NCBI RefSeq assembly: GCF_048593235.1
Contig: NC_133617.1
Span: 741,872,958-741,908,011, forward strand
Length of the DNA stretch: 35,054 nucleotides
Direction: 5' to 3'
Source of the DNA: Sminthopsis crassicaudata
Taxonomy: Eukaryota
Position numbers and translations under genes: made by a program. Under the pieces are notes generated by a model. The model was not told the origin of the DNA. It did no database searches and worked only from the letters and a program-made list of their open reading frames with translations. Shown one piece after another: positions 1 through 33,885 of this stretch (position 1 is its first letter; every line of letters begins with the position of its first letter).

Positions 1-354
1 GTCCTGGGGACCAAGGAGTCGTGCTCGCCCTTCAGGGCTGCACCCGAGCATATGCGCGTCCCTCCATGACCAATTCCAGTTAGATTGTATCACCAGTGTC
101 GTTCTTAGTGCCGCATCAGCCGTGGCCACGGAGGGGCGAGCAGAAAAGCCTGGACGGGCAGAAGAGCCTTCTTCACAGTCTCCCTTAAGCCACCAAGAGC
201 ATCATCAGGCCTGGAGTCCTGGGACCGGAACTGGCCCTCCCTCAATTCTGCCTCCCTCCCAGTTTAAATAACAGTTGATAAAAGTAACAGTAAAAGTGTG
301 CATTGTTCTTAAAGCATTTCTGGGTTCTTTGGAGTTATAGGGTCATTGTTTTTC

Positions 355-1186
355 TTTTTTTTTTTTAGTTGTCTCTAATATTTATTAATTTGATTTTAAA
401 ACAAAACTTTCTTGTAAACATTTTGTTTTCAGATACTGTGGGACCTTTTATACTTGATTTTTTTGAAACACTTTTATTTACAATAAGATCTAGAATTATA
501 AAAAATAATAAGAATACTTTATTAGACATTGTAACTACAAATGGAGCATTTTATCCTGTTTTTTTTAAAGAATTGAAGTAGATTATTTGATATCTTTTTT
601 TTAAATTATATATATATATATATATATATTTTATAATATTATCCCTTGTATTCATTTTTCCAAATTACCCCCCCTCCCTCTATTCCCTCCCCCCGACGAC
701 AGGCAATACCATACATTTTACATGTGTTACAATATAGTCTAGGTACAATACATGTGTGTGAATATCATTTTCTTGTTGCACAATAAACATTAGAATCCGA
801 AGGTACATGCAACCTGGGTAGATAGACAGTAGTGCTAACAATTTACATTCACTTCCCAGTGTTTCTTCTCTGGGTGTAGCTACCTCTGTCCATCATTGAT
901 CAACTAGAAGTGAGTTGGATCTTCTTTATGTTGAAGATTTCCACTTCCATCAGAGTACATCCTCATACAGTATTGTTGTTGAAGTGTACAGTGATCTTCT
1001 GGTTCTGCTCATTTCACTCAGCATCAGTTGATTTAAGTCTCTCCAGGCCTCTCTATATTCCTCCTGCTGGTCATTTCTTACCGAGCAATAATATTCCATA
1101 ACCTTCATATACCACAATTTACCCAACCATTCTCCAACTGATGGACATCCATTCATCTTCCAGTTTCTAGCTACAACAAAAAGAGC
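355..1186 (-). mobile_element. 5'-truncated, young-looking L1 insertion: ORF2 C-terminus and 3'UTR (595-1186) plus a probable 3'-transduced segment (367-594) and poly(A) tail (355-366)
   Basis: ORF 950-1195(-) ALFVVARNWKMNGCPSVGEWLGKLWYMKVMEYY...EAWRDL matches the L1 ORF2 C-terminus. A perfect 17-bp TSD tagggtcattgtttttc lies at 338-354 and 1187-1203. There are two tail tracts: T12 at 355-366 and T8/(AT)n at 595-630. Confidence 0.92.
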
Positions 1187-1214
1187 TAGGGTCATTGTTT
1201 TTCATTGATAAGAG

Positions 1215-2040
1215 GTTGCTAGAACTGGATGGATCTCAGAGGTCATCTGGCCCGAACCCTTTGATGGGGTCTTCAGGGTTGGGTGTGGTTAACAGAGGAA
1301 CTGGTAGAAAATAACCCCTGAGGCAGGCAGGAGAGAGATAGCTCCTACCTTTGGGGAGGTCTGAAATCCAAGCTCTGTAAACCCCAGAAACCCTCCCTCT
1401 GTGTCTCTAGCAGTCTGCCCTTGCCATGCCCTATCCCAGTCATGTCCTGGAGCTTCCAACTTCCCTCTAGAATCTGCTCACAGCCATCCCACGGCGGCTG
1501 CCCCCCTTGGGTCAGTCCCCCGGCTCTCTGCCCGGTGGGCTTTCCCCTTCCCCCATGCCTTGCATGTCTCCCCCTGAGCCCAGTAGGCCCTCACCCCATT
1601 TCTCCCAGCCCTTTTAGGGGCCGAGTCCTTTCAGGGTTTGGTCTGCCAGCCAAGGGTGAGCCTGACCTCTGGGGGGGTTCCCTTTCCCCTGGGTAATTAG
1701 TTGTGAGTTCCACTGAGGGCCTTGGCCCTCACACGCTCTAGTTCATATTCACCATTCCCGGTTCCTACTGTGTCCCTCCATTTTGTCTGTCACTCCTTCC
1801 CCTAAATAAATGCTCCAAAAACAGCCGGCATTGTGACTCCTTCAGGTGCCGACCCCACCTTTTGGGGGCTGCCATCATCGGGTGTCTACGGCACCCACAT
1901 CATGTTGGTGTTGAACCCAACATCCATAACGGTCATTTTACAGATGAGGAAACCAAGGGTCAAAAAACTGGGACCTGCCCGTGGGCTTAGCCAGTGTGGT
2001 AGAGATGAGAGTCCCAGCTTTCCGCTTCAGGTTCTTCCCA
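1215..2040 (-). mobile_element. MIR-like SINE split by an LTR (pieces ~1215-1261 and ~1932-2040)
   Basis: ctcagaggtcatctggcccgaaccct and cattttacagatgaggaaaccaagg are normally adjacent parts of the MIR/CORE consensus. Confidence 0.6.
1262..1902 (+). mobile_element. ERV LTR (solo or orphan 5' LTR)
   Basis: Terminal inverted repeat TGATG...CATCA, ~640 bp length, AATAAA at 1805-1810 about 90 nt from the 3' end, and insertion inside a MIR. No clear TSD. Confidence 0.65.
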
Positions 2041-2991
2041 CCCTGGAACGTTGCCTTCAGACTCACGCTCAAAAAATAATTGTGAGGAGATATTTTGAGG
2101 AAGAAAAACCAATCTTACGGTCAGAGCAGGGGTTTTTGTTGTGACTCTGCCCCTCTATCCTTGTTCTTCCCTCCATTTTCCCACGTGGTGATGACCCAGC
2201 CATGAGAAAAAGATGGGGGGAGATATTCCACAATGACATCTTTGATTTCGCATTGCCTTTCTGATGAGGGTCACGACCTGTGCTTTTTATGAGCAAACTT
2301 AAGGAATCAGCAGCTGTCAAAGATGGTGTAAATCTTTGGGAGAAATTGAATTTATTCTGCAGTCCTGCCTAGGAGAACCGCGGCAGTGGACTTGGGTCAT
2401 CCAGTGCTACATTCTAAGTGGAGCGGTGAGAAAGAGCTGTCGAGCCGGCCTAAGTGGGCCGGACAGGGGCCTCCTAGGGGAAGGAGAACCGAAAAGGGCT
2501 CCAGGACCCAAGTGGTCCCTTCTGGCCTCCGGATCATTTCTGAAATTCCGTGCTGCCATAGTTGTTTCTTTTCATTGAGAAAAGGTTCCCCTTGTACTTC
2601 TAAGTCAAACATAGGGCCAGACAGCCGTCACGAAGCTGAAGGTGCTCCGTGGAAGAGGTAAGAGGGGCTGGGGCTGAGGGATTTAAGGGGGAAGTGGAAG
2701 CTCTTTATTTTGTGACCAATAATGATCCTTCTGAGCCAATATTTAATTCTCCTTAAATTAAATGATTTATTACACTTATATTATCATATATAATATAATA
2801 TATTAATTACAAACAATCATTTATTTATTTATTTATTTAATTGAGCTAAATTTGTAGTTTAATGCAAAGAACCCATTGTGGTAGTTTAGCTGTGTGATCT
2901 TTGGCAAGTCACAGATAAATGAAAAAAACCATTAGGTCTCAGAGTTGAAATAGATGATCTCCAAGACTTCTTTCAACCTATTTTTTGAGCA

Positions 2992-3689: not shown

Positions 3690-3925
3690 TGTTACGTGCC
3701 GTCCTTGGTTTTGCTTTTAGCCCTGCCTCTGTGTGACCTCACTTGGGGTTTTCTTGGCAGAGATGCTGGAGCGCTTTGCCATTTCCTGCTCCAGCTCACT
3801 CTATACTTGAGGAAACTGAGGCAAGCCAGGTTAACTGACTTGTCCAGGGTCACACTGCTAGGAAGTGTCGGGGCCAGATTTAAACTCAGGAGCATGAGTC
3901 TGCCCGACTGTAGGCCCAGCTCTGC
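3690..3925 (-). mobile_element. MAR1-like CORE SINE
   Basis: ttggggttttcttggcagagatgctggag...gaggaaactgaggcaagccagg...gggtcacactgctaggaagtgtc is the reverse MAR1 pattern. Confidence 0.75.
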
Positions 3926-7330: not shown

Positions 7331-7460
7331 NNNNNNNNNNNNNNNNNNNNNNNNNNNNNNNNNNNNNNNNNNNNNNNNNNNNNNNNNNNNNNNNNNNNNN
7401 NNNNNNNNNNNNNNNNNNNNNNNNNNNNNNNNNNNNNNNNNNNNNNNNNNNNNNNNNNNN
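7331..7460. other. Assembly gap (130 N)
   Basis: Run of N. Confidence 1.
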
Positions 7461-7790
7461 ATTATACCAAAGTGCCTGCTTTTCTGGGTCCCCTTTGGAA
7501 CTTCCTTCTGCTCTCTTGTGGCTATTAATTTTTGTTGTTGTTGTTGTTGATGTTTTTTCCTTTTTTTGGCATCCATTTTAGTACTTTCCCCCTCCCTCTA
7601 TAATAAAATTCCTTTCTCCTAAAATAAAAGTTTTTCCCTTGCAACAACTAAGTACAGACAATCAAAACAAATACAGGTTTTGGTCGGGTCTGAAGATGAA
7701 TGTCTCACTCTTTGCTTCTCTGTCAAGAAGTGGGAAATGATTCACCCTCGGTCTTCTGTAGCTGAGATTGGTCATTTCATTGTGATGGTT
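7461..7790 (-). mobile_element. Old L1 3'UTR fragment
   Basis: T-rich tail followed by cccttgcaacaactaagtacag...ctctgtcaagaagtggg...ggtcatttcattg. Confidence 0.5.
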
Positions 7791-9544
7791 CTCCCTTGAA
7801 CACCAGGGAGAATGGATTTGTATTCAGTGATACCCTGTGGAACCTTGGGGTGACCCTCCTTTGGGCCTGAGGATTCAGGGGCTCGTACTGTGTAGTGATG
7901 AAGAAACTGGAAGAAATGGTGGCTCCTGTGGCAAAGAGCCCCTTGGGGTGCTCCTCATGGTGATCTCACCCCTTTCCCCCTTTTTCCCATTGTGGCTGTG
8001 TGGAAGCAGGATTGTCTTGGGCAGGTTCAAGAGCTGGGAGTGGGGCGGGAGGAAGGCTGGCTGTCCCGTTTCCCAAGCAGCCGTGAGCATGTGGCCCTTT
8101 CGGAATACTTGGGAATACTTTGAGGAGTCCAAGTGCCTTGCGCGTTAGGGACTCCAGAGCTCCCCGGAGGTCCCACCGGCTTACACAGCAGCATCCTCAG
8201 TGTGTGCCCGAGGAGCGGTGGCCAGTGGCCATGGAAGTGCCCACTCTGAGAGCAGAGGGACAGACTGAGGACAAGTGGACGAGGATGGAGACTTAGAAAG
8301 GCGGTTTTGTGGTAGAGGGGAGCTCCAGGTTTGTTCCCCAGAGGGAGTTTCCAGGTTCAGCAGAGAGCTACCTCCAGAGGGGTCTTCAGGTGGACTCTAC
8401 ATGGGGAGCAGACTTTTAGTGCAGGAGATACAGGTGCCTACTACCAGTGGAGTCAGGGTAGAGCCCCCCTCCCCATGGATGTTAGGTACATTTGTGGGAG
8501 AGGCTGCCTTAAGAAAGGAAAAGGAATATTCTGTGCTGACTATTTTTACTACACCATCTGTACAAATACCTATTTGAAAGCTAATTATTATGCTTGGCTG
8601 ATTGTTAGTGTGGCGTACACCAGTGGGGGCTCAGGAGCCACAGTATTGGAAACAGCCTCTTGGGGTTACCCTGAGGATTCATTCTGAGGAGCCCTGTCAG
8701 GAAGCATGAGTTGGGATGGTGTAAATTCAGAGTATCATGAGAGATTGGGAGTCTACACAGATGCTCTGCAGCTGGATCCAGGCTGGCCACAGGGTGAAGG
8801 AGGAGCTCTTCAACAGGAGGTAGTGTTCCATTTGAACTTACTCTTCCGAAGAACTTCAGGTGGAATGGGGAGAGTGTGCCCCTGAAGTAAGTGTGCTCGT
8901 GCATGTGTAAATATGTATGTGTGTCCTTGTGCTAGCTGTGAAGCAAACACCCTTTTTATCTAATTTTTTATTTTTATATATTTATTTATATTTTATATAT
9001 TTATTTTTGTATAATTTTTATATAATTTGATATTAATCGATTAGAAGGACCTGCAACACTGGTCACTATTGTTTAACAGGAGTGACCCCGCCAGAATAAG
9101 GGCTTGACCTAAGGACATTTGAAAGACTCTCTGACCCCCAAGAACACCCGTAGAAGTCTCAGATGGAGATGGAGCAAGCCTCAGCTCTGGAGAGGGAGGC
9201 TGGAGCACCTGCTGCACCCGAATGAGGGGGGACTGGCCAAGAACACTAGGGGGGGTGAGAAAAGGCCCTGAACCGGACTTCTGATCTGAGTGATAATCAA
9301 GAACTGAGAAATGACAGAATTACTTAACGTTTATCTTGTTCTCTATTTTCCAGAATCATTTTCAGGCTCTGGAGAATGGATAGGAATGGTTGAGAGACTC
9401 ATGACCCAAGACAAGGGAGATGTTGAGAGATCATTCTCTCCTGCTTCCAGATCTGAGTGAACTTATACCCCAGGGGGCCAAAAAATGGCTGAGCTGCTGC
9501 AGGGGAATCTTTGAAGGGATGGTGAGAACAGCTTGGACACAGCC

Positions 9545-9710
9545 CATTGAGGTTTGCAAAGCACTTTACACGTACTGTCCCATCTGATTCTCACAATCTT
9601 CTCAGATAAAATGCTGTTATATTCCTTTTATAGATGAGGAAATCAAGGCACAGAGAAGTTAAGGATCTGAGGCAGGATTTGAAATCAGATTTTCTTGGCT
9701 CCAACTCTTG
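9545..9710 (-). mobile_element. MIR
   Basis: aggtttgcaaagcactttaca...tatagatgaggaaatcaaggcacagagaagtt. Confidence 0.7.
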
Positions 9711-10439
9711 CTGTGTAAGTGTTGGGACCAGAGGACCCAGTTCTCCAAAATGGGAGGGTCAAGCCTTCCGGTTTTTGACAAGAGAGACTTTAGTCCCTGG
9801 CAAGATTCTAGAGTGCTTTTCTATTTTGAAACAGCTCTTCCATAGTTATATAAGAAGCCTTTTTTCCGATTTGTTTTTTGGATAAAAAAAAGCAGAGATT
9901 ACCTACTTCTCTGCCACTAGGTACATGTGGGTAATCAGGTTTTTGAAATGTCTGATTAAATGTCAATCATACCAGAATACACCCTCTGCTCCCAGAATTC
10001 ATTAGCATGTATGTGTGGCCATGAAGAATCCTGGTCAGAAGAGTGAGCAGGAGGACTGAGCTTGCTCGGTAGTTCTTTGGGACTTGATGTAGTGGGAGCC
10101 GACTGTTTATACTGTATGACAGTGAATATCTGGGAACATAAACTTGGGCATCAAGAAACGCTTGCCCTTGTAGGCTGGCAAGACAGAACGCAATAGAGAT
10201 GGCGAGACTTTTCCAAAACCTTTGCTTTGTTCCTGGGTTATTCCGAGGCGGCTGGAGATGTCCTGCCTTTTGTTTCACTTTAGTCATGGCACCTGGCCCA
10301 GTGTCTAGCACCAAGTCAGAACTTAATAAAAACTGGTTGCTTGCTTGCTTAATCGTCTCCTGTCTCCAAGTCCAGCAAGCCACCCTTGACGGCGGCTGTC
10401 TCCCTCCAAAGGGATGGGCTCCATACCAGTAAGGGCTCT

Positions 10440-10620
10440 CTCAGCCAATCAACCAATCAATCACCAAGCATTTACTAAGCACTTACCTTGTGCCAGGTGC
10501 TGAGGATATAGAGAAATGGCCAATAACCTCTGTCTTTAAGGATCTTACATTCTGATGGGGGAAGCAACAAGGACACGGGTAAATATAAACTGAATAAATG
10601 CCAAATGAAGACAAGATAAA
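10440..10620 (-). mobile_element. L2 3' end
   Basis: aatcaatcaccaagcatttactaagcacttaccttgtgccaggtgctg...cttacattctgatgggg. Confidence 0.75.
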
Positions 10621-11731
10621 TAATAACAACTAACATTTAGAGGGTGCACTAAGGTTTGTGAAGTTCAACAACCTGGGAGCATGGCCTTGGGACCATACTC
10701 GGGAGCTGATCCCGCCCTTCCCCTTGCCCTTTTACAGTTAGGTCCATCCACTTGCACTCAGCAACCCCGCTGTTTGCCTTGGGATTTAGTTAGCCCCCTC
10801 TTAAACACCTCATAAGATGGGGGAAGACCTGGGAAAGGACCTGCCTGCCTTCTGTCGATTGGACTTTTGGACGTGACTTGGGCTGGATATAAGGTGACTT
10901 TGATGGAATGATATCCCCTCAAAACAAAAACAGGGGTGAGAAAGAAAATTGCATTGGAAGAAAGGAGGGGGAGATTGAATTGGACAGATTATCCCGCATA
11001 AAAGAGGCATGAAAGAGATATCATAATGGAGGGGAAAATGAAGGGGTGATGGGCAAAGCTTAAACCTTCCTCTCATCAAAGTAGGCTCAAAGAGGGAATA
11101 CCATTACACTTAATAGTTCAGAAATCTATCTTATCCTATAAGGAAGTAAAAAGGGATGTGGAGAATAGAAAAGGGAGGGAAAACTGATAAAAGGAAGAGC
11201 TTATTGAGGAAGAAGTAAAACAGTTTTGAGAAGGGAAAGGGTAGGGAATAAGAAAGGGGGATAAATAAGGGGAAAATAGTATGGAAGGAAATACACAGTT
11301 ATCATAACTACAAATGAGAAAGGGATGCTCTCACCCATAAAACTAAAATACAAAGGACAATGGATTAAAAACCAGAATCTACAATACTTTGTTTACAAGA
11401 AACACATTTGAAGCAGAGAGATAGACACAGGATAATGGTAGGGGTTGGAGCAAAATTTATCGGCTTCAGCTGAAGCAAAGAAAACAGGAATAGCAATTGT
11501 GATCTCAGACAAAACAAAAGCAAAAAGATCTCATTAAGAGAGATAAGGAAGGAAACTACGTCTTGCTGAAATGTGCCAAAGACAATAAAGTCATATCAAT
11601 AGTAAACATATGTACCAACTGATATAGCATCTAAATTTTTGAAGAAGTTGAATGAGTTATAGAAGAAAATTGATAATAAAACTATACTAGTGGGGGACCT
11701 CAACTTTCCCCTCTCAAAACTAGATAAGTCT

Positions 11732-13070
11732 TTTTTATATATTCAGATTTTAAAAACAAGTTTATAAAACATATATTGCATGTTGTATATAATATATGAG
11801 GACTGGATAGTACAAATTTATGTTCACAGTTTGACGTGACAAAATATCATTATTGAATTCCTATTGATCTACCAAAGTAGAAACAGTGAAGTTACATAAA
11901 ATACTCACATCCTTAGGAAGAAAGGTTGCCAAAATGTTTCATTATTTGCAAGTTATATTAATGAATGCTAAACACCTTTTACCCATTCATTCTTATTAGC
12001 TTATAGAATATTTTGCATTTATTAAAATATCTGCATAATTTACACAAGTATTAAAGTACTATAAAGTAATATTCTGCTATATTGGCAAGTATGGTTTAAG
12101 AAATGCTAAACAGAAATATTACTTTAACCCTCTAACATTAAGTAAAATAAATAGAAAAAAAAGAGGGTAGTATTTGTAAAACATAGCATTGTTGTAGCCC
12201 TCATTTAATCTGTGTAAAATGGCTTTATTTTAGAAAGAATTTCCGGTCATTTTAGAAGTTGTTCACTTGACTGAAGAGAAAGAAGACAATATACTCTGAT
12301 CAACTTTATGTCCTTCAGGGATTTTTCAAGAACTATGATCTATTTTTCAAACAAGCCAAATCACTGCCAAACCTGCTTTCCTCAAAGAGATTGTCCATAA
12401 AAATAATCACAAAAATGATCACAAATGACAAACAGTGCTATACAGTATCAGCAAAATGCAGATGAGTCATTTTTAAAAATTTCACATCTAGTTCTCCTAA
12501 GGATCTTTTTTAAGGCTCTTGAGAACCTTCTGCTAATTTAGCACCTCTTTGGTTGTATGCAATATCTATTCTGATAATATATTCCCTAACCCAAAAGTCC
12601 ATTAGAAAGTTCATGCCCATTGAAGAGGTAGATTCCCATTTTAAAACTCTAATGTGAGACATATTTATTGTTAATTTCCTGTCTTCTTCCCTGTGACACA
12701 CAAGGAATCTGAGAAATCATTTAGCAAGTAGAATTTTCAAAAGAATTCCATGTGAACAAACAATCGTGGTTGATTAAGGATATTGTTACTAAAATGACCA
12801 TTGAGAGTGATAGGATATATAACGCAAAAATATGTTCAAGAGCATTTCAAGATTATGCTGTATTTGAATCCTTCCATAATAAATAGCTTCGAATCACCGA
12901 GAGACTAGAATTTTCATCAATGAAAATAAAATACATTATTTATAAAGGAAATTTTGTAAAGGACCAAATAACTAAACTAAACAAAAGACAAGAGAGAGAA
13001 ACATGGGAATGCACAATCATGTCTCAAGGTTGTTTTCTTTTTTTGAAGTTGATCAGTTGTTGATAAATAA
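11732..13070 (-). pseudogene. 1.34-kb non-repeat, AT-rich retro-insertion (3'UTR retrocopy or orphan transduction) inside L1
   Basis: Flanked by tagataagtct (11721-11731) and tagataaatct (13071-13081), an 11-bp TSD with 1 mismatch. There is a short T tract at the left end and an ATCT/AA target site. It has no recognisable TE or long ORF. Confidence 0.6.
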
Positions 13071-13283
13071 TAGATAAATCTAACAAAAAAATAAACAAGA
13101 AGTTAAGAAATGTTAGATACGGTAGCTCTCTGGAGAAACTGGAATGGGAATGGAAATTTTTTCTCAGAAGTACACAGAACCTGCACAAAAATTGACTATA
13201 TGTTAGAATATAAAAACCTTATAACCAAATGCATAAAAGCAGAAATAGTAAATGTATCCTTTTTAGATTATAATGCAATAAAA

Positions 13284-14144
13284 TTATTTTTTACTTTAAA
13301 ATTTTTTTATTAAAGTTTTTTATTTACAAAACATAAGCATGGGTAATTTTTCAACATTGACCCTTGCAAAACTTTCTGATCCAAATTTTTTCCCTCCTTC
13401 TTCCCACCCCTTCTCCTAGAAGGCAGTAGTCCAATTCATGTTAAACATGTTAAAATATATGTTAAGTCCAATATATGTATACATATTTATATAGTTATCT
13501 TTTTAAAAGTTTCTAATTAATTAATTAATTAAAATTTTTACACAAATTTTATGCATAGATAATTTTTCAGCATTGACAATTGCAAAACCTTTTGTTCCAA
13601 CTTTTCCCCTCCTTCCCCCCACCCCTTCACCCAGATGGCAGGTTGCTAATATATGTTAAATATGTTAGAATTATACAGTTATCTTGCTGCACAAGAAAAA
13701 TTAGATCAAGAAGGGAAAAAAAAACTGAGAAAGAAAACAAAATGCAAGTAAATAACAACAAAAAGAGTGAAAATACCATGTTGTAATCCACACTCAGTTC
13801 CCACAATTCTCTCTCTGGGTGTAGATGGCTCTTTTCATCACTCAACAAATGGAATTGGTTTGAATCATCTCATTGTTGAAGAGAGGCATGTCCATCAGAA
13901 CTGATCACTATATGATCTTGCTGTTGCCGTGTGCAATGATCTCCTGGTTCTGCTCACTTCCCTCAGCATCAGTTCCTGTCAGTCTCTCCAAGCCTCTCTG
14001 AAACCATCCGGCTGGCCATTTCTTATACAACAATAGTATTCCATAACATTCATATACCATAATTTATTCAGCCCATCAATTGATGGGCATCCATTCAGTT
14101 TCCAGTTTCTAGACACCACAAAAGGCTGCCATAAACATTTTGCA
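13284..14144 (-). mobile_element. L1 3' fragment (ORF2 C-terminus and 3'UTR) inserted into the older L1
   Basis: ORF 13979-14203 ...FVVSRNWKLNGCPSIDGLNKLWYMNVMEYYC...FREAWRD. TSD tgcaataaaa lies at 13274-13283 and 14141-14150. Confidence 0.88.
13501..13670 (-). mobile_element. Second, very short L1 3' end nested within the previous L1 3'UTR
   Basis: A new T/AT-rich tail and a second copy of the cattgac...tccccccacccc...ggcagg block are flanked by ttatatagttatct (13487-13500) and ttatacagttatct (13671-13684). Confidence 0.65.
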
Positions 14145-16420
14145 ATAAAAACTATATTCAATAATGGACAATGGAAAGACATTAAAAGTAATTGGAAATT
14201 CAATAATTTAATCTTAAAAAAACAAGAGGGTCAAAGAACAAATTATAGAGACAATTGATAATTTCATAAAATTATCACAAAAAACAAGACAGCCTACCAA
14301 AATTTATGGAATGCAGCCACAGTGGTATGTAGGGGGAAAATTATAGCTCTAATTGTTTACATCAATAAAGTAATTGAGAAAAAGGAGATCAATGAATTGG
14401 ACATGCAACTAAAAAAAAACTAGAAAAAAGAACAAATTAAAAATCCCCCATTAAACACCAAATTAGAAAACTTGAAAACCAAAGGAGAGATTAATACAAT
14501 TGAAAGTAGGAAAACCGTTGAACTAATAAATAAAACTAGAAGTTGGTTTTATGAAAAAAATCAATGAAACAGACAACTCATTGGTTAATTTGATTAGAAA
14601 AAAGAGAAAACAAAATTACTAGTTTCAAAAATGAAAGGGGTAAGTTCACCACAAATGAAGAAGAAATTAAAACAATTATTAGGAGCTATTTTGCCCAATT
14701 ACATGCCAATAAGTTTGACAATTTAAATGAAATAGATGAATTTCTATGATGATATAAACTGCTCAGATTAATAGAAGAAAAAAATACTTAATCCAATCTT
14801 AGAAAAAGAAATTGGAAAAGCCATTAATGAACTTCCTAAGAAAAAATCCCCAGGATCAGATGAATTCACAAGTGAACTCTATCAAACATTTAAAGAACAA
14901 ATTAATTCCAATTCTATATAAGCTATTTGAAAAAAATAGGTGGAATCCTGCCCAATTCCTTTTATGACAAACATGGTGCTGATACTTAAATCAGGAAGAC
15001 CCAAAACAGAGAAATTTCCCTAATGAATATTAATGCAAAGATTTTAAATAAAATACTAGCAAGGAAATTACAGCCACATATCACAAGGATCATACATTAT
15101 GAGTAGGTGGGGTCTATACCAGAACTGCAGGGCTGGCTCAATATTAGGAAAATATCAGCATAATTGACCATATCAATAACAAAACCATTAGAAATCATAA
15201 AACTATTTCAATAGATAAAGAAAAAGCCTTTGACAAAAAACAGCACCCATTTCTATTAAAAATACTAGACAGCATAGGAATAAATAGAGCTTTCCATAAA
15301 ATGAATATTTTACCTGAAAGCATAAACAAGAATTATTTGTAACCGAGGTAAGCTAGAATCCTTCCCAATACAATCAGGAGTGAAGCAAGGATACCCATGA
15401 TCACTTTTGTTATTTAATATTGTACTAAAAATATTAGCTACAGCAATAAGAGAAGAAAAAGAAATGAAAGGAATTAGAAGAGGCAATGAGGAAACAAACT
15501 TTTCAGTCTTTGAAGATATGTTATGCTTAGGAAATCTCACATAATCAACTAAAAATTACTTGAAATTATTAGCAATTTTGGCAAAGTTGTAAGATACAAG
15601 ATAAACTCACAGTATATCATCATTAGTATGTTACTAACAAAGCCCAGCAGCAAGAGATAGAAAGAGAAATTCCATTTAGATAACTGTAGACAATATAAAA
15701 TTTCTGCCAAGGTAAACCCAGGAACTATGTGAATACAACTATAAAACACTTTCCACCCAAATCGAACCAGATACAATTAGAATTGGAAAAATGTTAATTG
15801 CTCATGGGTAGGCTAAATCAATATAATAAAATGACAATTCTATCTAAATTTATTTATTCAATACCATGCAAATCAAACTTTCAAAAACTCATTTTATAGA
15901 ACTAGAAAAAAATAACAGGATATATAGAACTAGAATAAATAATATAAATATTAAAAAATCAAACTAAAAAATTAAAAATTCATCTGGAAGTTCAGGGATA
16001 TCAAGGGGATCAATGAAAAAAAAATGTGAATATAGGTTATCTAGCCATACCAGATCTCAAACTGTATTATAAAGTGGCAATTATCAAAACAAAACTGACT
16101 AAGAAGCAGAATAAATTAGGTATAAATTACATTATAGCAAATGACCAGAGTAATCTAGTATATACGATAAACCCAAAGACTTAAGATTTTAGGACAAAAA
16201 AACTTCATTATTGATAAAAGTGTTATTACTAGACTCTTATGATTCTTCTTTTCCCACCATCCATACTTTGTCCTGCACCTACCTCATGGTAAGCCTTATC
16301 TGGGTAGTACTTAGACTCTTTCTTGGGGATTTAGTGAAGACTCCCTATTTTTTGTTTTGCTGCATATCTCATTGGATCAAATAAAATAAACTTTCTTACT
16401 CAATGGACAAATTTAAGATT

Positions 16421-16563
16421 TTTTCCCCTCCTGAGGCTGGGGTTAAGTGACTTGCCCAGGATCACACAGCCAGGAAGTGTTAAGTGTCTGAGACCAGATT
16501 TGAATTCAGGTCCTCCTGACTTCAGGGCTGGTGCTCTATCCACTGCACCACCTAGCTTCCCCT
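16421..16563 (-). mobile_element. WSINE1, full length
   Basis: The reverse complement reads ...ctaggtggtgcagtggatagagcaccagccctgaagtcaggaggacctgaattcaaatctggtctcagacacttaacacttcctgg. A perfect 15-bp TSD gacaaatttaagatt lies at 16406-16420 and 16564-16578. Confidence 0.93.
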
Positions 16564-16807
16564 GACAAATTTAAGATTAAGAAGGAACATTGATAAAGGC
16601 CTCTTAGGTGGAAGTAGCAAAGGGTCATCAATTCTTTGGACCTAACGGTTTCTAGAATGGAGAAAGGAAATTCCTGGGGATTATAATTCAAGAGAGAGAA
16701 GACGGTATTTTCTGGAGACTGCTTTTCAGTTGGGGAAAATAATTTCTTGGTGATCTTGCTAAAAGTACCATGCTCCTTCATATAGTAAAATATTAAAGAC
16801 GAGAAGT

Positions 16808-17057
16808 AAGGAGATACCAGTAAACATTTAACAACCAGCTCCACTCACCTCCTCCACCAAATATATATAACACATTTTCATGTTTAATCTGAATTATTAA
16901 TATTTTCTCCATCCCTTTTTAAGTTTAGACAATCAACAAAACAATAAATTGAGCCTTGATTTGTACCACTTACTGATTTCTGAGGTGTGAAATGCTCACA
17001 GTGAAAATTTAATAATCAGCTCTTCCAAGGCTTTGAACTGGTTCCAGTACATCTCTG
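16808..17057. mobile_element. Non-autonomous hAT (Tip100-like) DNA transposon remnant
   Basis: Left end cagtaaacatttaacaaccagctcc and right end aatcagctct...gaactggttccagtacatctctg match recalled hAT-Tip100-type termini once CpG decay is allowed for. No TSD is visible. Confidence 0.5.
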
Positions 17058-17092
17058 GGTGAAAACAATTTGAGGTAAGTACAGGGTACAGA

Positions 17093-17290
17093 AGGGAAGC
17101 TAGGTTGCCCAGTAGGTAGAGTTCTAGTCCTAGAGTCAAAAAAACCCGAGTTCACCTCCAGTCTCACTTATTATCTGTGTGAACTATGTCAAATCCAGTT
17201 TCCTCAACTGGGAGAAGGTGATAATAATAGCACTTACTTCCTGGGGTTGTTGTAGTGCCTGGCACATAGTAGGGGCAATATAAATATCAT
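17093..17290 (+). mobile_element. MIR-like SINE with an L2-like tail
   Basis: tRNA-like head, cagtttcctcaactg, and aataatagcacttacttcctggggttgttgt. Confidence 0.6.
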
Positions 17291-17877
17291 TATTAAAAAA
17301 ACCTTTCCCTTCTTTAAGTTTTAAGAGACTTTGCATTTCTTTAATTTGTAGGGATAGAAAGGATTTTCCTGGAGAAAGCCAACATGGCGCTCAGCCCCAT
17401 TCATGGTCCATGGAGGATTTCTTTCCTTCTCCCATTCTCACCAAACAAGTAGAGTGGTTCACACACAAGTGGAAGGCAGAGGGTGGGAAAGAGCTAAGCC
17501 TGAAGAACAGCATTGAGGTTTGACCAGATTGCTAGGGCTGGCTTTCAATGGCGGCACTTCAACAGACAAGGCCCTGGAAAACGGTGGTCTGGGTTGTGTC
17601 TCTGCTGGGAGTGCTCGGCGGTTAGTGTTGGCGGGGATCTGGAAGACGGCCCTCTCTCCACAATGGTTACTCTTCTTGCTGACATTTGTCATGCTAGGCT
17701 GGAAGGAGGCTGGTGGGCTGAGAGGCTTTTATGTTCTCAAGGCTTTTGGGTTCTAGATTCAAGGCTATTCCCCTGGGGACTGAGGATAGCCAATGGGGGC
17801 TTGTTTAACTTGCCTGGAACACATTGACTCTGGATGGGAAGTGCTTGAGAACTCCTCCCTTGAAATACTGTCTCTTT

Positions 17878-18020
17878 GGGGCAGCCAGGTGGGTCAGTGG
17901 GTAGAGCATCCGCTCTGAAGTCAGGAGGACCAGAGTTCAAATTTGACCTTAACACTTAACACTTCCTAGATGTGTGACCCTGGGCAAGTCACTTAACCTC
18001 AATTACCTCAGGGGGGGGGG
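17878..18020 (+). mobile_element. WSINE1 with a poly-G tail
   Basis: gggcagccaggtgggtcagtgggtagagc...cttaacacttcctag...cttaacctcaattacctca, then a G run. TSD gaaa(g)tactgtctcttt lies at 17862-17877 and 18021-18037. Confidence 0.9.
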
Positions 18021-18779
18021 GAAAGTACTGTCTCTTTTATGATTGGAGCAGCAGGAAGAAGTCATTTCTTCCACAAAGTCCTGGCTGACTAGTACTTCAG
18101 AATATGCCCTGATTCTGGCTGCGCAGCTGGCAGCCCATCCAAGGGGCTCTAATTCACTGAACAAATGGCAGGCTGGCCTCAGTTACAGACCACCTGTACA
18201 TGGTCCAGATCTCTCCCAAGCACTCCCGGTCGCCATCATCCTCAGTCCTTAGCTTCTTCCACTGGACACATCGCTCTCAGTCCTGGGCTCGCCGGCCACT
18301 GCCCCACTGGACTTGTCACGTCCTCTCGGCTTCTCGCTGCCTCGGTTGCCCGTCTTCTGTTACGCTTAAGAAGTATCTACCATGAGTCGCCATACCAAAT
18401 ACTTGTAACCTCTAAACTACCTGGAAAAACCCACCTTTGAAATGTAGAAAGCTAGCAGAGGAGCTCCAACTCTGTGGGCGCAGGATGCCGTACACAGCCT
18501 CCCTGTCATCCTGCCTGACACCGAGATTGTCCCGAAGCTGCTTTTCAAGGAGCCTGCAGAGGTGAACTCGCATCCCAAGGCTTTCATTTACCTGCAGAAG
18601 GCAGTTATGTTATCCACTTGTGCCTCAGCTTACAGAACATTAAACAAAAACAGATGGCGGGGCAGAAGGACTTGTCCCAGGACGGTTTCTATTTGAACCC
18701 CCTGGCATAAGATGAGAAGAACAAGACAACAGCCCTACCAGCGACCGTCGAAGCAGCTTGGGTTCGAATAGGACGCTCA

Positions 18780-18920
18780 GGTTTGCCAAGAGCTTCACAA
18801 AGCCCTGGCTTTGCCCCCCACAACCCTGGAAAGGAGACACTACCGTTAGCCTCACTTTACAGATGAGGAAATTGAGACTTGGAGAAGGGAAGGGGCTTGC
18901 CGGGGGTCCCAGAGCCAGTG
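18780..18920 (-). mobile_element. MIR
   Basis: gtttgccaagagcttcaca...ctcactttacagatgaggaaattgagac. Confidence 0.65.
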
Positions 18921-19253
18921 AACCCCAAAGGAGGAGCCAGAAACCCATTCTGAGCAGAGCGGCTTCTCCCAGCCTTTTTTATCCAGGTTCCGTGTTGCTG
19001 GAATGAATAGCGAGGGCAGGTGTGGGAGGGAAGAGCAGGAGATGGTGACAGGTGTGCACGGGAGTCAGTGGGAGATGGCAGCTTTCTGGGCTGCTAATTG
19101 TATTTTCTTACCGTGAAGGCAGTTCTAGCTGCTTTTTACCTTGGGAGGGAGAGGCAGGGTGGGGATTCTCCATATTTTGTGCTAGGACATCTCTGCTTTT
19201 CTCTTTTGTTGGTCATTTAATCACAGAATCTTTGTGGATCTAACCCTGCCACC

Positions 19254-19258
<5 letters not shown>

Positions 19259-19314
<56 letters not shown>
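19259..19314. repeat. (TG)28 microsatellite
   Basis: Perfect dinucleotide run. Confidence 0.98.
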
Positions 19315-19315
<1 letters not shown>

Positions 19316-19848
19316 TTCAGACCACAGCACAATGTGTTTCCTCAGTAAGAATGTGCCGAACTTCCTGTTCTCCACGAAGGTGCCCAATGTTCATTTCTCA
19401 AATTTTGAGACTCTTAGAATAAGGGATGGGGCCAGAGAGTGAATCTGGAATGGTGGGGTAGTGGACAAGCTCACTCTATGCTGTCTGAGGCGCTTTCTCC
19501 TTTGAGGCTCTGTCATTTAGTTTTTATTTTTACATTTATTTTTTTCTTCTTCTTTAAAACCCTCTTGTGGAGGCTCCTCCCTCGGGCAGACTCCTACTTT
19601 CCTCTATTTTCACCATTTGAGGATGCTGGCACGAGGTGGTCCCAGAGCCGATGGAACCTTTCAGACCCGACTTGAGCAACTCCGTTCACCAGCAGGACAC
19701 ATATGCTTTGGAGGTTATATATTTGAGTTCTCATGTGAAGTAGAGACATTCAGATATAGAGTCTATCCATTCCTCTGACTCCAGCTGACTAAATCCTTGT
19801 TCCCAGAATCCTTTGCCCTTCCTACTTGTTCTTCCCTTTGTCCTTTCA

Positions 19849-20021
19849 AGGCAAGGTACAGTGTGTCCAACTGGGGCTGCTCAGTCCACAATAAGCTCAG
19901 AACCTTAACCACAAGTCAGGCACAAATGGTCCATGGGAACATTTGAAATGGAGAGGTCTCTAGATTTGAGCATCTCATTTTTTTTTTTTTTGGTGCTACT
20001 ACAATTCTGCTTCCCTCGCAG
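19849..20021 (-). mobile_element. RTE 3'-end fragment, near-copy of 21461-21630
   Basis: The reverse strand corresponds to the RTE C-terminal zinc-finger region and is ~90% identical to the copy 1.6 kb downstream. Confidence 0.8.
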
Positions 20022-20259
20022 CTACGTGCTGAACAATATAGGGACCAAAACAAAGCCATCTCTGCTTCTAAGGAAATACATGCAAAGTAGCCACCTTTAG
20101 GCATTAGCCGCTGAGGAGCTGGGAACTCCCCCACATTGGGGCACTGTATGTTATAGTGGGAAAACATACTGGGTATGGAGTTAGAGGACTTGGGTTCAAA
20201 TTCAGCTCATTAATAATTGACTCATTAATAAATGAATTACCTATTCCACGGTAGAGCTC

Positions 20260-20690
20260 CCTGCATCCTCTCTCTCCCCTCTCCCCTCCATCTTCCACCT
20301 GGCTTCCTAAAGCACAGGGCTAACCATGCTATTTCCCTAAGGGAGCTCCGAAAAAGGTTCAATGGGCCCCTATTTCCTAGAATCAAACATAAACTCTGTT
20401 TGGCATTTACACAGTCTGACTTCAGCCCCGCTTCCCGGACTGATTTCACCTTATTCCATCTCACACACGCTCTGATCCAGATGCTCCCTGGGGAACTGCG
20501 CCAGAAAACCCCGTCTCTCATCTCAAGGTCTCTTGCCTAGAATGCCCGCTCTCTCACCCCTGTCTGTCACTTCCAGATTAAATGTCACCGTCTTCACGAG
20601 TCCCTTCCCAGTTTCCCAGCTGCTAGATTGCTTTGTTTTAGTCCCTGGATGCTTCAGCCCCTGGCACAGTGCATGGCACATAGAGAGACC
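20260..20690 (+). mobile_element. L2 3' fragment
   Basis: ttcctaaagcacagggctaaccatg...agaatcaaacataaactctgtttggcattt...cccctggcacagtgcatggcacatag. Confidence 0.7.
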
Positions 20691-21234
20691 TCTTTACTTC
20701 CCAATTTTACTCCATGGTTGGACTAAATTCAAAGGAAAGGTTCCTTTCAGCTCTGAATTCTATAATTACAAGTGAAAGGATAACAAGGAGCCGCTCTCAG
20801 ATTTTGTCAACGTAGGGATTTTGTTATTTAGTCGTCATTTAATCAGAGGTAATTTTCCTGACTTTTCCGTCTTCTGTTGGTTTGTGGATTGTATCACGTG
20901 CCTTTGGGCAGGTGTGGGCTCACTAGCAGAGAGATAATAGACTTGTTAAGCCATGCGCTCTGAGGAGTTATAACGTAGGTGGGTGAGTACTTGGACCCTC
21001 TTCAGCCTTCTCTTTCAGTGCCCTTCTCTGCTCTCTCCTGCTCCGCTGGGATTTTTCCTCCCTCAGGTGCTTGTCCGGTGGCCCATTTTTGCCAGCTTTC
21101 AGTTGGCTAACGGTCACAGATGTCTGTTAAGGTCTGAACCCACAGGTTGTGCAAACAGAGATCGGTGTCCCAGCTGGACCACTTTGGAAGCATTTGCATT
21201 TTCACAGAGATATCTGAAGACGCAAAGGAATGAA

Positions 21235-21390
21235 TTCCATAATTCAAGAAGCATTAATGAACAATTCTCTGTTACGTACAAGATATCACTGTACTGGGTT
21301 CTAGGTCACAAGAACAAAAGCAAACTTCCTTAAGGAAGTAATCTGTTACTGAGGGTACACAAAATGTATACAGATGGGTAAATACAATAT
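21235..21390 (-). mobile_element. L2 3' end
   Basis: aattcaagaagcattaatg...actgtactgggttctagg...ccttaaggaag. Confidence 0.5.
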
Positions 21391-21424
21391 ATATATATAT
21401 ATATGCATATTGTTTGTGTGTGTG

Positions 21425-21775
21425 TACTTGTAGAGGACTAAAGTGACATCATGATGCTGGAGGCAAAGTACAGTGTGTGCAACTGGGGCTGCTCAGTCTG
21501 CGATAAGCTCAGAACCTTTACCACAAGTCAGGCACAAATGGTCCATGGGAACATTTGAAATGGAGAGGGCTCTAGACTCGAGCATCTCGTGTTTTATTTT
21601 GGTGCTACTGCAGTTCTGCTTCCCTCACAGCGCCTTGTTTGATGCTGGTGTGCTCTGCTTGGTAGTCCTGTGTCAGCGTCTCCTGTGTCTCCCAACGGGC
21701 ACTAAAGTTCTTCCCAGAGACCTCGGGAGTGTCCTTATGCAGCTGCTTCTGCTCTCTGTGTGAGCACTTGCTTGT
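21425..21775 (-). mobile_element. RTE LINE 3' fragment
   Basis: agaggactaaagtgacatc...gtacagtgtgtgcaactg...gagacctcgggagtgtcctt...tgtgagcacttg is collinear with the reverse RTE 3' end. Confidence 0.8.
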
Positions 21776-21913
21776 GCTATGTATGCTAGGGTTTAAAGTC
21801 AAGTAAACACACTTTGCTTAAGTGTTGACCATGCGCCAAATATTGTGCTAAGTTCTGGACACACACACACAAACCCAAAACAGTGGCTGCCCTTCAAGGA
21901 ACTTCTAATCTAA

Positions 21914-22322
21914 NNNNNNNNNNNNNNNNNNNNNNNNNNNNNNNNNNNNNNNNNNNNNNNNNNNNNNNNNNNNNNNNNNNNNNNNNNNNNNNNNNNNNNN
22001 NNNNNNNNNNNNNNNNNNNNNNNNNNNNNNNNNNNNNNNNNNNNNNNNNNNNNNNNNNNNNNNNNNNNNNNNNNNNNNNNNNNNNNNNNNNNNNNNNNNN
22101 NNNNNNNNNNNNNNNNNNNNNNNNNNNNNNNNNNNNNNNNNNNNNNNNNNNNNNNNNNNNNNNNNNNNNNNNNNNNNNNNNNNNNNNNNNNNNNNNNNNN
22201 NNNNNNNNNNNNNNNNNNNNNNNNNNNNNNNNNNNNNNNNNNNNNNNNNNNNNNNNNNNNNNNNNNNNNNNNNNNNNNNNNNNNNNNNNNNNNNNNNNNN
22301 NNNNNNNNNNNNNNNNNNNNNN
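21914..22322. other. Assembly gap (409 N)
   Basis: Run of N. Confidence 1.
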
Positions 22323-23719: not shown

Positions 23720-24275
23720 TGGAGGAGGGAGGGATTTGGGGGAAATAGAGTAAGTTCAGTTTTGGGAATTTCGAGTTTGAGGTACTTATGGGAAAGGGAG
23801 CTCTTACGATCCATCAGTCACTCGATCCATAAATATCTGCATCACCTACTATGTGCTAGGCAGATACAGAGACAAAAATGAATGTTTATTCTCTCAGGAA
23901 GCCTGGATATACGTAAATGTGTTCAAAATACAGACAAATAAGTACAAGATGATTTTAGAGGGGCGGTTAGGAGGCACCAGCGATGCATAGAGCATCAGGC
24001 TTGCAGTCAGAAAGACATCTCCCCGAGTTCGAACCTCAGACATGTAGTAGCTGTGGGACCTGGGCAAGTCACGTAACCTCATGCCTCAGTTTCCTCACCT
24101 GTAAAATGAACTGAAGAAGGAAATGACAAACCACTCTGCCCAGAAAATGCCAAAAAGGGAGCACCGAGAGTCAGGCAGGACTGAACAATCATTTTTGAAG
24201 GAGGCACTAGCAGCTGTGGGGAAAGAGCAGGAAAGCTTTCACGTAGGAGAGGGTGATTGAGCTGAACTTTCATAA
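23720..24275 (-). mobile_element. L2 fragments with a MAR1-like SINE (+) nested at ~23960-24190
   Basis: taagttcagttttgggaatttcgagtttgagg and cacctactatgtgctagg are L2-like. The SINE shows a head, CORE and gagagtcaggcaggactgaacaa tail. Confidence 0.6.
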
Positions 24276-25794: not shown

Positions 25795-26010
25795 GTCCTG
25801 GGTCTGGGACCAGGAAGACTCACTTCCCGAGTTCAAATCCAGCCTCCCACTTAATAGCTTTATGAAGGGTAAGTCACTTCACCCTGTTTGCCTCAGTTGG
25901 TTCATCTGTAAAATGATCAGGAGAAGGCGATGGCAAGTCACCCCAATATCTTTGCCAAGAAAACTCCAAATGAGGTCACAAAGAGTCAGACACAACTGAA
26001 AACAACTGAC
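25795..26010 (+). mobile_element. MAR1-like SINE
   Basis: caggaagactcacttcccgagttcaaatccagcctc...tctttgccaagaaaactccaaatgaggtcacaaagagtcagacacaactgaa. Confidence 0.8.
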
Positions 26011-28284: not shown

Positions 28285-28520
28285 TAGGGGCACTTAGGTG
28301 GCTCCTCAGTGCACAGAATCTTGGACTTGGGAGTCAGGAAGATCCTCTTCAAGAGTTCCAATCTGCCTTCAGACACTGCACAGGTCACTTCACCCTGTTT
28401 GCCTCAGTTTCCTCATCTGTAAAATGAGCAGGAGAAGGGAAAGATAAACCACTCTAATATCTCTGCCAAGAAAATCCCTAATGAGGCCCAGAGTCAGACA
28501 GTCTGAAACCACTGAACGAC
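28285..28520 (+). mobile_element. MAR1-like SINE
   Basis: ggggcacttaggtggc...gagtcaggaaga...cagtttcctcatctgtaaaatgag...ctctgccaagaaaatccc...gagtcagaca. Confidence 0.8.
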
Positions 28521-30524: not shown

Positions 30525-30970
30525 CTTTTTTAAATTTAATTTTTTTCAATTAACAAGCATTTATTTTCTTTCTCTCCCACCTTCCTCTCCACTGGGAAAG
30601 AAAAACCTAAAACTTTGTGACAAAGAAACATAAGGAAATTCCCATATTGCCGATGTCCAAAAATGTGTGTCTCATTTTGCTCTTTATTTATTTTTCAATT
30701 AACAAGCATTTATTTTCTTTCCCTCCCACCTTCCTCCCCACTGAGAAAGAAAAACCTAAAACTTTGTGACAAATAAGCATAATCAAGGAAACAAATTCCC
30801 ATATCATCAATCTCCAAACATGTGGGTCTCATATTGCTTATTAGTCCATTGCCTCTTTTTCAGGAATTGAGTAGCTTCCTTTATCACAGGTCTTCTGGGA
30901 CATGGTTAATTATTGCTTTGATCAGCGTTCTTGAGGCTTTCAAGTTACTTGTTTTTATGATTTTGTTAAG
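30525..30970 (-). mobile_element. Old L1 3'UTR whose terminal ~150 bp is present twice in tandem
   Basis: tttttcaattaacaagcatttattttcttt...gaaagaaaaacctaaaactttgtgacaaa starts at 30542 and again at 30691. Confidence 0.75.
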
Positions 30971-33663: not shown

Positions 33664-33885
33664 TGGGGCAGCTAAGGGCACAGAGGGCACAGGGAGACTC
33701 ATGCTCTTGAGTTCAAATCTGGCCTCAGATACTTACTGCCTGCCTGGCCAACTCACTTAGCCCTGTGTGCCTCGGTTTCCTCATCTTTAAAATGAGTTGG
33801 AGAAGGAAACAGCAAATCATTCCAGCATCTTTGCCAAGAAATTCCCAAACGGGGTCACAGTGTTAAACACGATCAAAAACCGGCT
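33664..33885 (+). mobile_element. MAR1-like SINE
   Basis: ggggcagcta...gagttcaaatctggcctcagatacttac...aaaatgagttggagaaggaaacagcaaatcattccagcatctttgccaagaa. Confidence 0.8.

What the first reader, a model, noticed from the sequence alone, without database searches (positions are those of the whole stretch)
338..1203. Probable L1-mediated 3' transduction: ~230 bp of foreign DNA carried inside a 17-bp TSD
Seen: a perfect 17-bp TSD (338-354 and 1187-1203) encloses, on the minus strand, an L1 ORF2 end and 3'UTR, then a first A/AT tail (630-595), then 228 bp of unique AT-rich sequence (594-367), then a second A12 tail. An AATAAA (TTTATT at 381-386) sits 14 nt before that second tail. No AATAAA is visible just before the first tail. 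Established: this double-tail layout is the signature of read-through L1 transcripts. Inference: the segment tags a source L1 elsewhere in the genome. That would identify a once-active marsupial L1 master copy.
Basis: partly seen in the sequence, partly recalled or inferred. Interest (0 to 1): 0.75.

Follow-up and report, generated by a model that had tools for sequence, protein, structure and literature searches.

The report
Truncated L1 carrying extra flanking DNA
A short, 5'-truncated L1 retrotransposon copy carries 228 bp of foreign AT-rich DNA and a second poly(A) tail inside one 17-bp target-site duplication; this is most likely an ordinary L1 3' transduction, but its source locus could not be looked for here.

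Summary
A perfect 17-bp direct repeat (338-354, 1187-1203) encloses an 832-bp insert. On the minus strand the insert reads:
- the last 78 codons of L1 ORF2;
- a 3'UTR ending in (TA)11-ATTT-A8;
- 228 bp of 21.5%-GC DNA found nowhere else in the window;
- AATAAA, 14 nt, then A12.

Older L1 3' ends in the window align with this copy only as far as the first tail, so L1 ends there. The canonical AATAAA of the older copies is missing in this one. The 228 bp resembles no L1 3'UTR here and no Rfam family.

A partnered L1 3' transduction is the most likely reading (about 0.7). It is not proven. The segment is also flanked by AAAAAAAAGA at a perfect TTTT/AAA endonuclease site, so a second retro-insertion into the L1 tail stays possible (about 0.15).

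The decisive test is finding the segment next to a source L1.

L1 3' transduction is textbook, and it is already documented in Tasmanian devil tumours with 35 source elements. The same scan has noted at least 17 such layouts elsewhere in this genome. Low interest.

The parts
338..354 (-). Target-site duplication, the copy on the 3' side in L1 sense (GAAAAACAATGACCCTA on the minus strand)
   Evidence: a perfect 17/17 match with 1187-1203, and 0 of 100 shuffles reach 2 matches.
355..366 (-). Second (terminal) poly(A) tail, A12
367..594 (-). 228-bp non-L1 segment, the candidate transduced flank of a source L1. GC is 21.5%. It carries three AATAAA: 523-518, 478-473 and 386-381.
   Evidence: Unique in the window. 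Composition and hexamers. Local alignments to the L1 3'UTRs of the window score no better than shuffles. No Rfam match.
381..386 (-). AATAAA polyadenylation signal, 14 nt upstream of the A12 tail
595..602 (-). First tail, A8. Under the transduction model this is the source element's own genomic A-tail.
603..632 (-). AAAA-(TA)11-ATTT, the AT-microsatellite end of the L1 3'UTR. It occupies the place where older L1 copies carry ...ATGCATAT..GTAAATAAAAAA.
   Evidence: TRF finds period 2, 11.5 copies, 607-629. Alignment A2.
603..949 (-). L1 3'UTR, with a G-rich tract at about 700-665
   Evidence: Alignments with the older L1 at 13.3-14.1 kb.
950..1186 (-). L1 ORF2 C-terminal 78 codons plus the TGA stop (952-950). 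The 5' truncation point is at 1186.
   Evidence: Match to human ORF2p residues 1200-1265, E = 7e-12. About 75% nucleotide identity to the older L1 at 13790-14123.
1187..1203 (-). Target-site duplication, the copy on the 5' side in L1 sense. The inferred first-strand nick on the + strand is TTTTC/ATTG.

Best explanation
This is a partnered L1 3' transduction made in a single retrotransposition event.

A source L1 elsewhere in the genome was transcribed. Its 3' end lacks a canonical AAUAAA and ends in (TA)n-ATTT plus a short genomic A-tail. Transcription ran through that weak end into 228 nt of AT-rich flanking DNA, and the RNA was cleaved and polyadenylated 14 nt after a flanking AAUAAA.

L1 endonuclease nicked the + strand of this GC-rich locus at TTTTC/ATTG. 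Reverse transcription primed on the poly(A). It copied the flank, the source's tail and the L1 3'UTR, and stopped 78 codons before the end of ORF2 (5' truncation). Staggered second-strand cleavage produced the 17-bp TSD.

Shown: the layout, the L1 identity, the position of the L1 end, the foreign nature of the 228 bp, and the TSD. Inferred: read-through from a source element, and the existence of that source.
For: - A single perfect 17-bp TSD encloses everything.
- The L1 ORF2 C-terminus and 3'UTR are in sense orientation directly upstream of the segment.
- Alignment with two older L1 3' ends shows homology running up to the (TA)11-ATTT-A8 block and no further. So L1 ends at the first tail. 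The older copies' AATAAA is replaced here by AATTTAAAAAAAA.
- Only weak hexamer variants precede tail 1. That is the condition that favours read-through.
- The segment ends in AATAAA-14 nt-A12.
- The segment is 21.5% GC, while the flanks of the insertion site are 53-55% GC. It was therefore imported.
- It resembles neither the L1 3'UTRs of the window nor any Rfam family.
- The published L1-1_SH 3'UTR is 415 nt including the tail (PMC4408412). Here the distance from the stop to the second tail is 595 nt.
- Priors: about 25% of human tumour L1 insertions carry a transduction (abstract of PMC13009371). In Tasmanian devil tumours, 94 of 1,141 candidate L1 insertions carried one, from 35 source elements in DFT2 (10.1101/2022.05.27.493404).
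Against: - No source locus or sibling copy was found, because no copy of this genome could be searched.
- The segment has its own possible TSD, AAAAAAAAGA, at a perfect TTTT/AAA endonuclease site. Under transduction the 'GA' part is a coincidence with a chance of about 0.08.
- Read-through had to pass two earlier AATAAA inside the segment (523-518 and 478-473). The first is followed by a U-rich stretch.
- Whether the 228 bp is single-copy in the genome is unknown.
Confidence: 0.7

Rival explanations
1. Two events. First, a 5'-truncated L1 inserted with the 17-bp TSD and a short A-tail. Later, a 5'-truncated copy of another polyadenylated RNA (a 3'UTR fragment or an unrecognised retroposon) inserted by L1 endonuclease into the TTTT/AAA site at the start of that tail. 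This second event made a 10-bp TSD, AAAAAAAAGA.
For: AAAAAAAAGA flanks the segment exactly, at 602-593 and 362-353. The + strand reads CTTTTTTTT/AAATT there, the L1 endonuclease consensus. The two non-A bases match with a chance of about 0.08. Published TSDs of devil L1-1_SH are 5-15 nt. The window itself holds such a tail insertion among older elements: a second L1 3' end (13290-13510) sits right behind the tail of another (13515-13760).
Against: Eight of the ten repeated bases are tail A's, which any double-tail layout gives. A nested element must be younger than this young L1, yet the segment looks like no L1 3' end, no CORE-SINE of the window and no Rfam RNA. It would therefore be a fragment of a unique transcript hitting one particular tail. 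From general knowledge of retrocopy numbers, that is orders of magnitude rarer than transduction. If the full 10-bp TSD is taken, the insert's tail would be only 4 A's.
Confidence: 0.15
2. Template-switch chimera. Reverse transcription began on the poly(A) of an unrelated mRNA, copied its last 228 nt, then jumped to the 3' end of an L1 RNA. This gives the same order of parts in a single event.
For: The layout and the single TSD are equally compatible. L1 reverse transcriptase is known to switch templates, as in U6-L1 chimeras (own knowledge; PMC4476161, listed, was not read).
Against: In known chimeras the 5' partner is typically a small nuclear RNA and L1 or an mRNA is the 3' partner. An L1 RNA as the 5' partner joined exactly at its tail is not the usual form (own knowledge). 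There is no positive evidence here.
Confidence: 0.05
3. The 228 bp is not unique. It is a 3' extension carried by a whole young L1 sub-lineage, that is, an old transduction that became part of the element. On this reading it tags a family, not one source locus.
For: The segment is A-rich on the L1 sense strand (A 43%, T 35%). No other copy of this young subfamily is in the window to compare with. L1 lineages are known to replace their UTRs (own knowledge).
Against: The A/T excess is not significant. The L1-1_SH 3'UTR is reported as 415 nt including the tail, far less than 595 nt. Older copies end where the first tail lies.
Confidence: 0.05

Closest known systems
Human L1 3' transduction (partnered type): read-through of the weak L1 polyadenylation signal, as defined in cell-culture and genome surveys from 1999-2000 and in cancer genomes (own knowledge; abstract of PMC13009371)
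   Same: L1 3' end, retained tail, unique downstream DNA, downstream AATAAA and a second poly(A), all within one TSD. The L1's own signal is weak or absent.
   Different: Here the source locus is not identified. The first tail is an AT-microsatellite plus A8 rather than a plain A-run.
L1 3' transductions in Tasmanian devil transmissible tumours (10.1101/2022.05.27.493404)
   Same: The same mechanism in a dasyurid genome. That study found 35 source elements, one of them highly active.
   Different: Those are somatic events detected from discordant reads. This one is fixed, or at least present, in a reference assembly, so it is a germline event. The species of this window was not established here.
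Retro-insertion into the A-tail of an older element (tail-to-head L1/L1 or SINE/L1 pairs)
   Same: A TTTT/AAA target at the start of an A-tail, with a short A-rich TSD. An example lies in this window at 13.29-13.76 kb.
   Different: The inserted piece here is not a recognisable repeat.

Membership tests
L1 3' transduction (partnered) | A genuine L1 3' end in sense orientation directly upstream of the extra DNA | tested here: met
   ORF2 C-terminus matches human ORF2p 1200-1265, E = 7e-12. The 3'UTR is homologous to older L1 3' ends.
L1 3' transduction (partnered) | L1 ends at the first tail, and the extra DNA is not L1 | tested here: met
   Homology to two older L1 3' ends stops at (TA)11-ATTT-A8. 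The segment scores no better than shuffles against three L1 3'UTRs.
L1 3' transduction (partnered) | The extra DNA ends in a poly(A) tail 10-30 nt after a polyadenylation signal | tested here: met
   AATAAA at 386-381, then 14 nt, then A12.
L1 3' transduction (partnered) | One TSD pair encloses L1, extra DNA and both tails | tested here: met
   17/17 identical, and the only two matches in the window.
L1 3' transduction (partnered) | No separate TSD around the extra DNA alone | tested here: inconclusive
   AAAAAAAAGA flanks it. Eight bases are tail A's, and the chance of the GA match is about 0.08.
L1 3' transduction (partnered) | The extra DNA maps to a locus directly 3' of a source L1 of the same subfamily | not testable with these tools
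Metagenome scans were blank. The protein word search was blank.
Nested L1-endonuclease-mediated retro-insertion in an L1 tail | Own TSD at an endonuclease consensus site | tested here: inconclusive
   There is a 10-bp low-complexity repeat at CTTTTTTTT/AAATT. This cannot be told apart from two A-tails plus a 2-base coincidence.
Nested L1-endonuclease-mediated retro-insertion in an L1 tail | The insert derives from a transcript or repeat that has no L1 upstream at its origin | not testable with these tools
   No genome or transcriptome of the species could be searched.
Template-switch chimeric retrocopy (U6-L1 type) | The 5' partner is a small nuclear or other abundant RNA joined to a 3' L1 or mRNA part | tested here: not met
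   The 5' partner here is L1 itself. No Rfam RNA lies in 338-1203.

The most novel reading that the evidence does not exclude
The 228-bp tag leads to a germline-competent source L1, with sibling insertions carrying 72-, 117- or 228-nt tags that end at the three AATAAA of the segment. This would be in a dasyurid lineage once reported to have no functional L1. Alternatively, the tag has become a fixed new 3' module of a young L1 sub-lineage.
Probability: 0.15. Interest if true: 0.3.

Novelty: new member of a known kind. Interest (0 to 1): 0.12.

Why it matters
If the tag can be mapped, it names one germline source L1 and lets its offspring be counted in a marsupial lineage. L1 activity in that lineage was disputed: an in-silico screen found no intact L1 (PMC4408412, PMC5010896), whereas tumour data later showed 35 active sources (10.1101/2022.05.27.493404). 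As a mechanism it adds nothing new. It is one more instance of a textbook process, and the same scan has flagged many like it in this genome.

Tried and rejected
One findings look-up by place reported that it covered window 1-2703 on its own, so it did include the flanks.
- A protein word search with the 70-aa ORF of the segment found no candidate. The same search with the ORF2 end found only one UniRef protein. The collection therefore holds essentially no marsupial non-coding ORFs, and I left a third search unused.
- Two exact-pattern scans of JGI metagenome contigs were blank. One used a 25-mer of the segment, the other a 26-mer of the L1 3' end.
- Pfam did not recognise the 78-aa ORF2 end. 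The PDB sequence search did.
- I looked for another 3' end of the same young subfamily at the other (TA)n sites of the window (8.9, 21.4 and 29.5 kb). None is an L1 end.
- I suspected by eye that the end of the segment resembled an older L1 3' end. Local alignment against shuffles rejected this.
- The reverse order of events was rejected: the 228-bp retrocopy first, then L1 inserted at its 5' edge. The L1 part alone has no flanking repeat.
- The scan's own notes gave nothing by sequence or by relatives.

Full report
**Observation.** I read the stretch on both strands. The 17-mer TAGGGTCATTGTTTTTC stands at 338-354 and at 1187-1203. Those are its only two matches in the 35,054-base window even with two mismatches allowed, and none of 100 dinucleotide shuffles gave two matches. 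Between the two copies lie 832 bp.

On the minus strand the order of parts is as follows.
- An open frame of 78 codons runs from 1186 to 953 and ends at TGA (952-950).
- A 3'UTR follows, with a G-rich tract.
- The UTR ends GGGATAATATTATAAAA-(TA)11-ATTT-A8. The (TA) run is 607-629 by TRF and A8 is 602-595.
- Then come 228 bp (594-367).
- Then A12 (366-355), followed directly by the TSD.
- AATAAA lies at 386-381, 14 nt before A12.
- No AATAAA or ATTAAA lies within 60 nt upstream of the first tail. Only TATAAA (635-630), AATATA (630-625) and TTTAAA (605-600) are there.

Every coordinate in the finding is correct.

**Identity of the L1 part.** Pfam gave nothing for the 78 residues. A sequence search of the PDB matched them to residues 1200-1265 of the 1275-residue human LINE-1 ORF2 protein, E = 7e-12. 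An older L1 on the same strand at 13.3-14.1 kb is about 75% identical to 845-1181. The only hit in the large protein collection was a Sarcophilus harrisii UniRef entry that contains an L1-like stretch. That fits a dasyurid origin but does not establish the species. The scan's own notes show that the window lies more than 663 Mb along its sequence record, as expected for the very large marsupial chromosomes.

**Where L1 ends.** I aligned the young 3' end with two older L1 3' ends of the window, 13515-13760 and 13290-13510.
- TACAAGGGATAATATTATAAAAT in the young copy pairs with TGCAAGGGTCAATGTTGAAAAAT in the old ones.
- The (TA)11-ATTT-A8 block occupies the place where the old copies carry ...ATGCTTATGTTTTGTAAATAAAAAA and then their tails.
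- Homology therefore runs to the first tail and stops there.
- The canonical AATAAA of the older copies is absent from this copy. This part of the alignment is low-complexity and should be read with care.

The published devil consensus L1-1_SH has a 3'UTR of 415 nt including its tail (PMC4408412). Here the stop-to-first-tail distance is 355 nt and the stop-to-second-tail distance is 595 nt.

**The 228-bp segment.**
- It is 21.5% GC (A 43%, T 35%), whereas the DNA on either side of the insertion is 53-55% GC. It was brought in with the insert.
- It has no second copy in the window.
- It gives no Rfam match at E <= 1.
- Its best local alignments to the three L1 3'UTRs of the window score no better than dinucleotide shuffles: 62 to 183 of 300 shuffles reach the observed score. 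A resemblance I thought I saw by eye to an older L1 end was thereby rejected.
- It contains three AATAAA (523-518, 478-473, 386-381), and the last was used.

**Models.** Two models fit the anatomy.

Model A is one event, a read-through transcript of a source L1 (3' transduction).

Model B is two events. An L1 with a short tail inserted first. Later a polyadenylated RNA fragment inserted into the start of that tail. On the L1-sense strand AAAAAAAAGA stands at 602-593 and 362-353. The + strand reads CTTTTTTTT/AAATT there, a perfect L1 endonuclease site.

Weighing the two:
- Under A, the two A-runs are given by the layout. Only the 'GA' is a coincidence, with a chance of about 0.08 from the segment's own composition.
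- Under B, a transcript that is neither an L1 nor a SINE of this genome has to hit this one tail. Anything nested must be younger than the host L1, and young L1 3' ends would be recognisable.
- Transductions accompany roughly a tenth to a quarter of L1 insertions. The figures are about 25% in the abstract of PMC13009371 and 94 of 1,141 candidate insertions in devil tumours.
- Retrocopies of unique transcripts are far rarer than L1 copies (own knowledge). The devil genome holds 1.18 million L1 copies.

I therefore put A at about 0.7 and B at about 0.15. A template-switch chimera and a lineage-wide 3' extension each get about 0.05.

The reverse order of events, with the segment first and L1 inserted at its 5' edge, is excluded. 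The L1 part alone has no flanking repeat.

**What could not be done.** It needs sequence of this species.
One findings look-up by place reported that it covered window 1-2703 on its own, so it did include the flanks.
- The protein word search with the segment's 70-aa ORF found no candidate.
- Two exact-pattern scans of metagenome contigs were blank.

The source L1, any siblings and the copy number of the segment therefore remain unknown. The statement that the segment 'identifies a master copy' is untested.

**Comparison and novelty.** The layout is that of a partnered L1 3' transduction. In dasyurids the process is already documented. Devil facial tumour 2 carries 83 transductions, which identified 35 source elements, one of them with at least 29 offspring. 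This came after an earlier in-silico claim that the devil has no functional L1. The same scan holds at least 17 notes with 'transduction' for other windows of this genome. They are unchecked and I did not use them as evidence.

This is one more probable instance of a known process. Its only specific value would be as a tag for a germline source element, once it is mapped.

Noticed in passing
window 13290-13760 (minus strand): Two older L1 3' ends lie head to tail. One ends in a (TTAA)n tail near 13515. It is followed at once by a second fragment of about 190 bp of L1 3'UTR, which ends in AAATAAAAAACTTTAATAAAAAAA near 13300. It looks like a short L1 inserted into, or just behind, the tail of another.
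   Followed up: partly
window 19849-20022 and 21461-21631: A direct repeat of about 170 bp at 89-90% identity, 1.6 kb apart, in a GC-rich stretch. It is not an obvious SINE.
   Followed up: no
window 30542-30843: Two tandem copies of a unit of about 150 bp (92 nt at 95% identity and 51 nt at 80%, spacing 149-157).
   Followed up: no
window 3723-3868, 16438-16562, 17878-18011, 24082-24137, 25871-25989, 28372-28486, 33752-33854: Many copies, in both orientations, of a CORE-SINE-like repeat (…GGCAAGTCACTTAACC…CCTCAGTTTCCTCATCTGTAAAATG…). This is typical marsupial or MIR-type SINE content.
   Followed up: no
P0001 (UniRef, Sarcophilus harrisii, 103 aa): A protein named 'mitochondrial import inner membrane translocase subunit' shares 74% identity with the L1 ORF2 C-terminus over about half of the 78-aa query. 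The gene model probably runs into an L1 fragment.
   Followed up: no
window 7331-22322: There are 539 N's within this span (masked or gaps).
   Followed up: no
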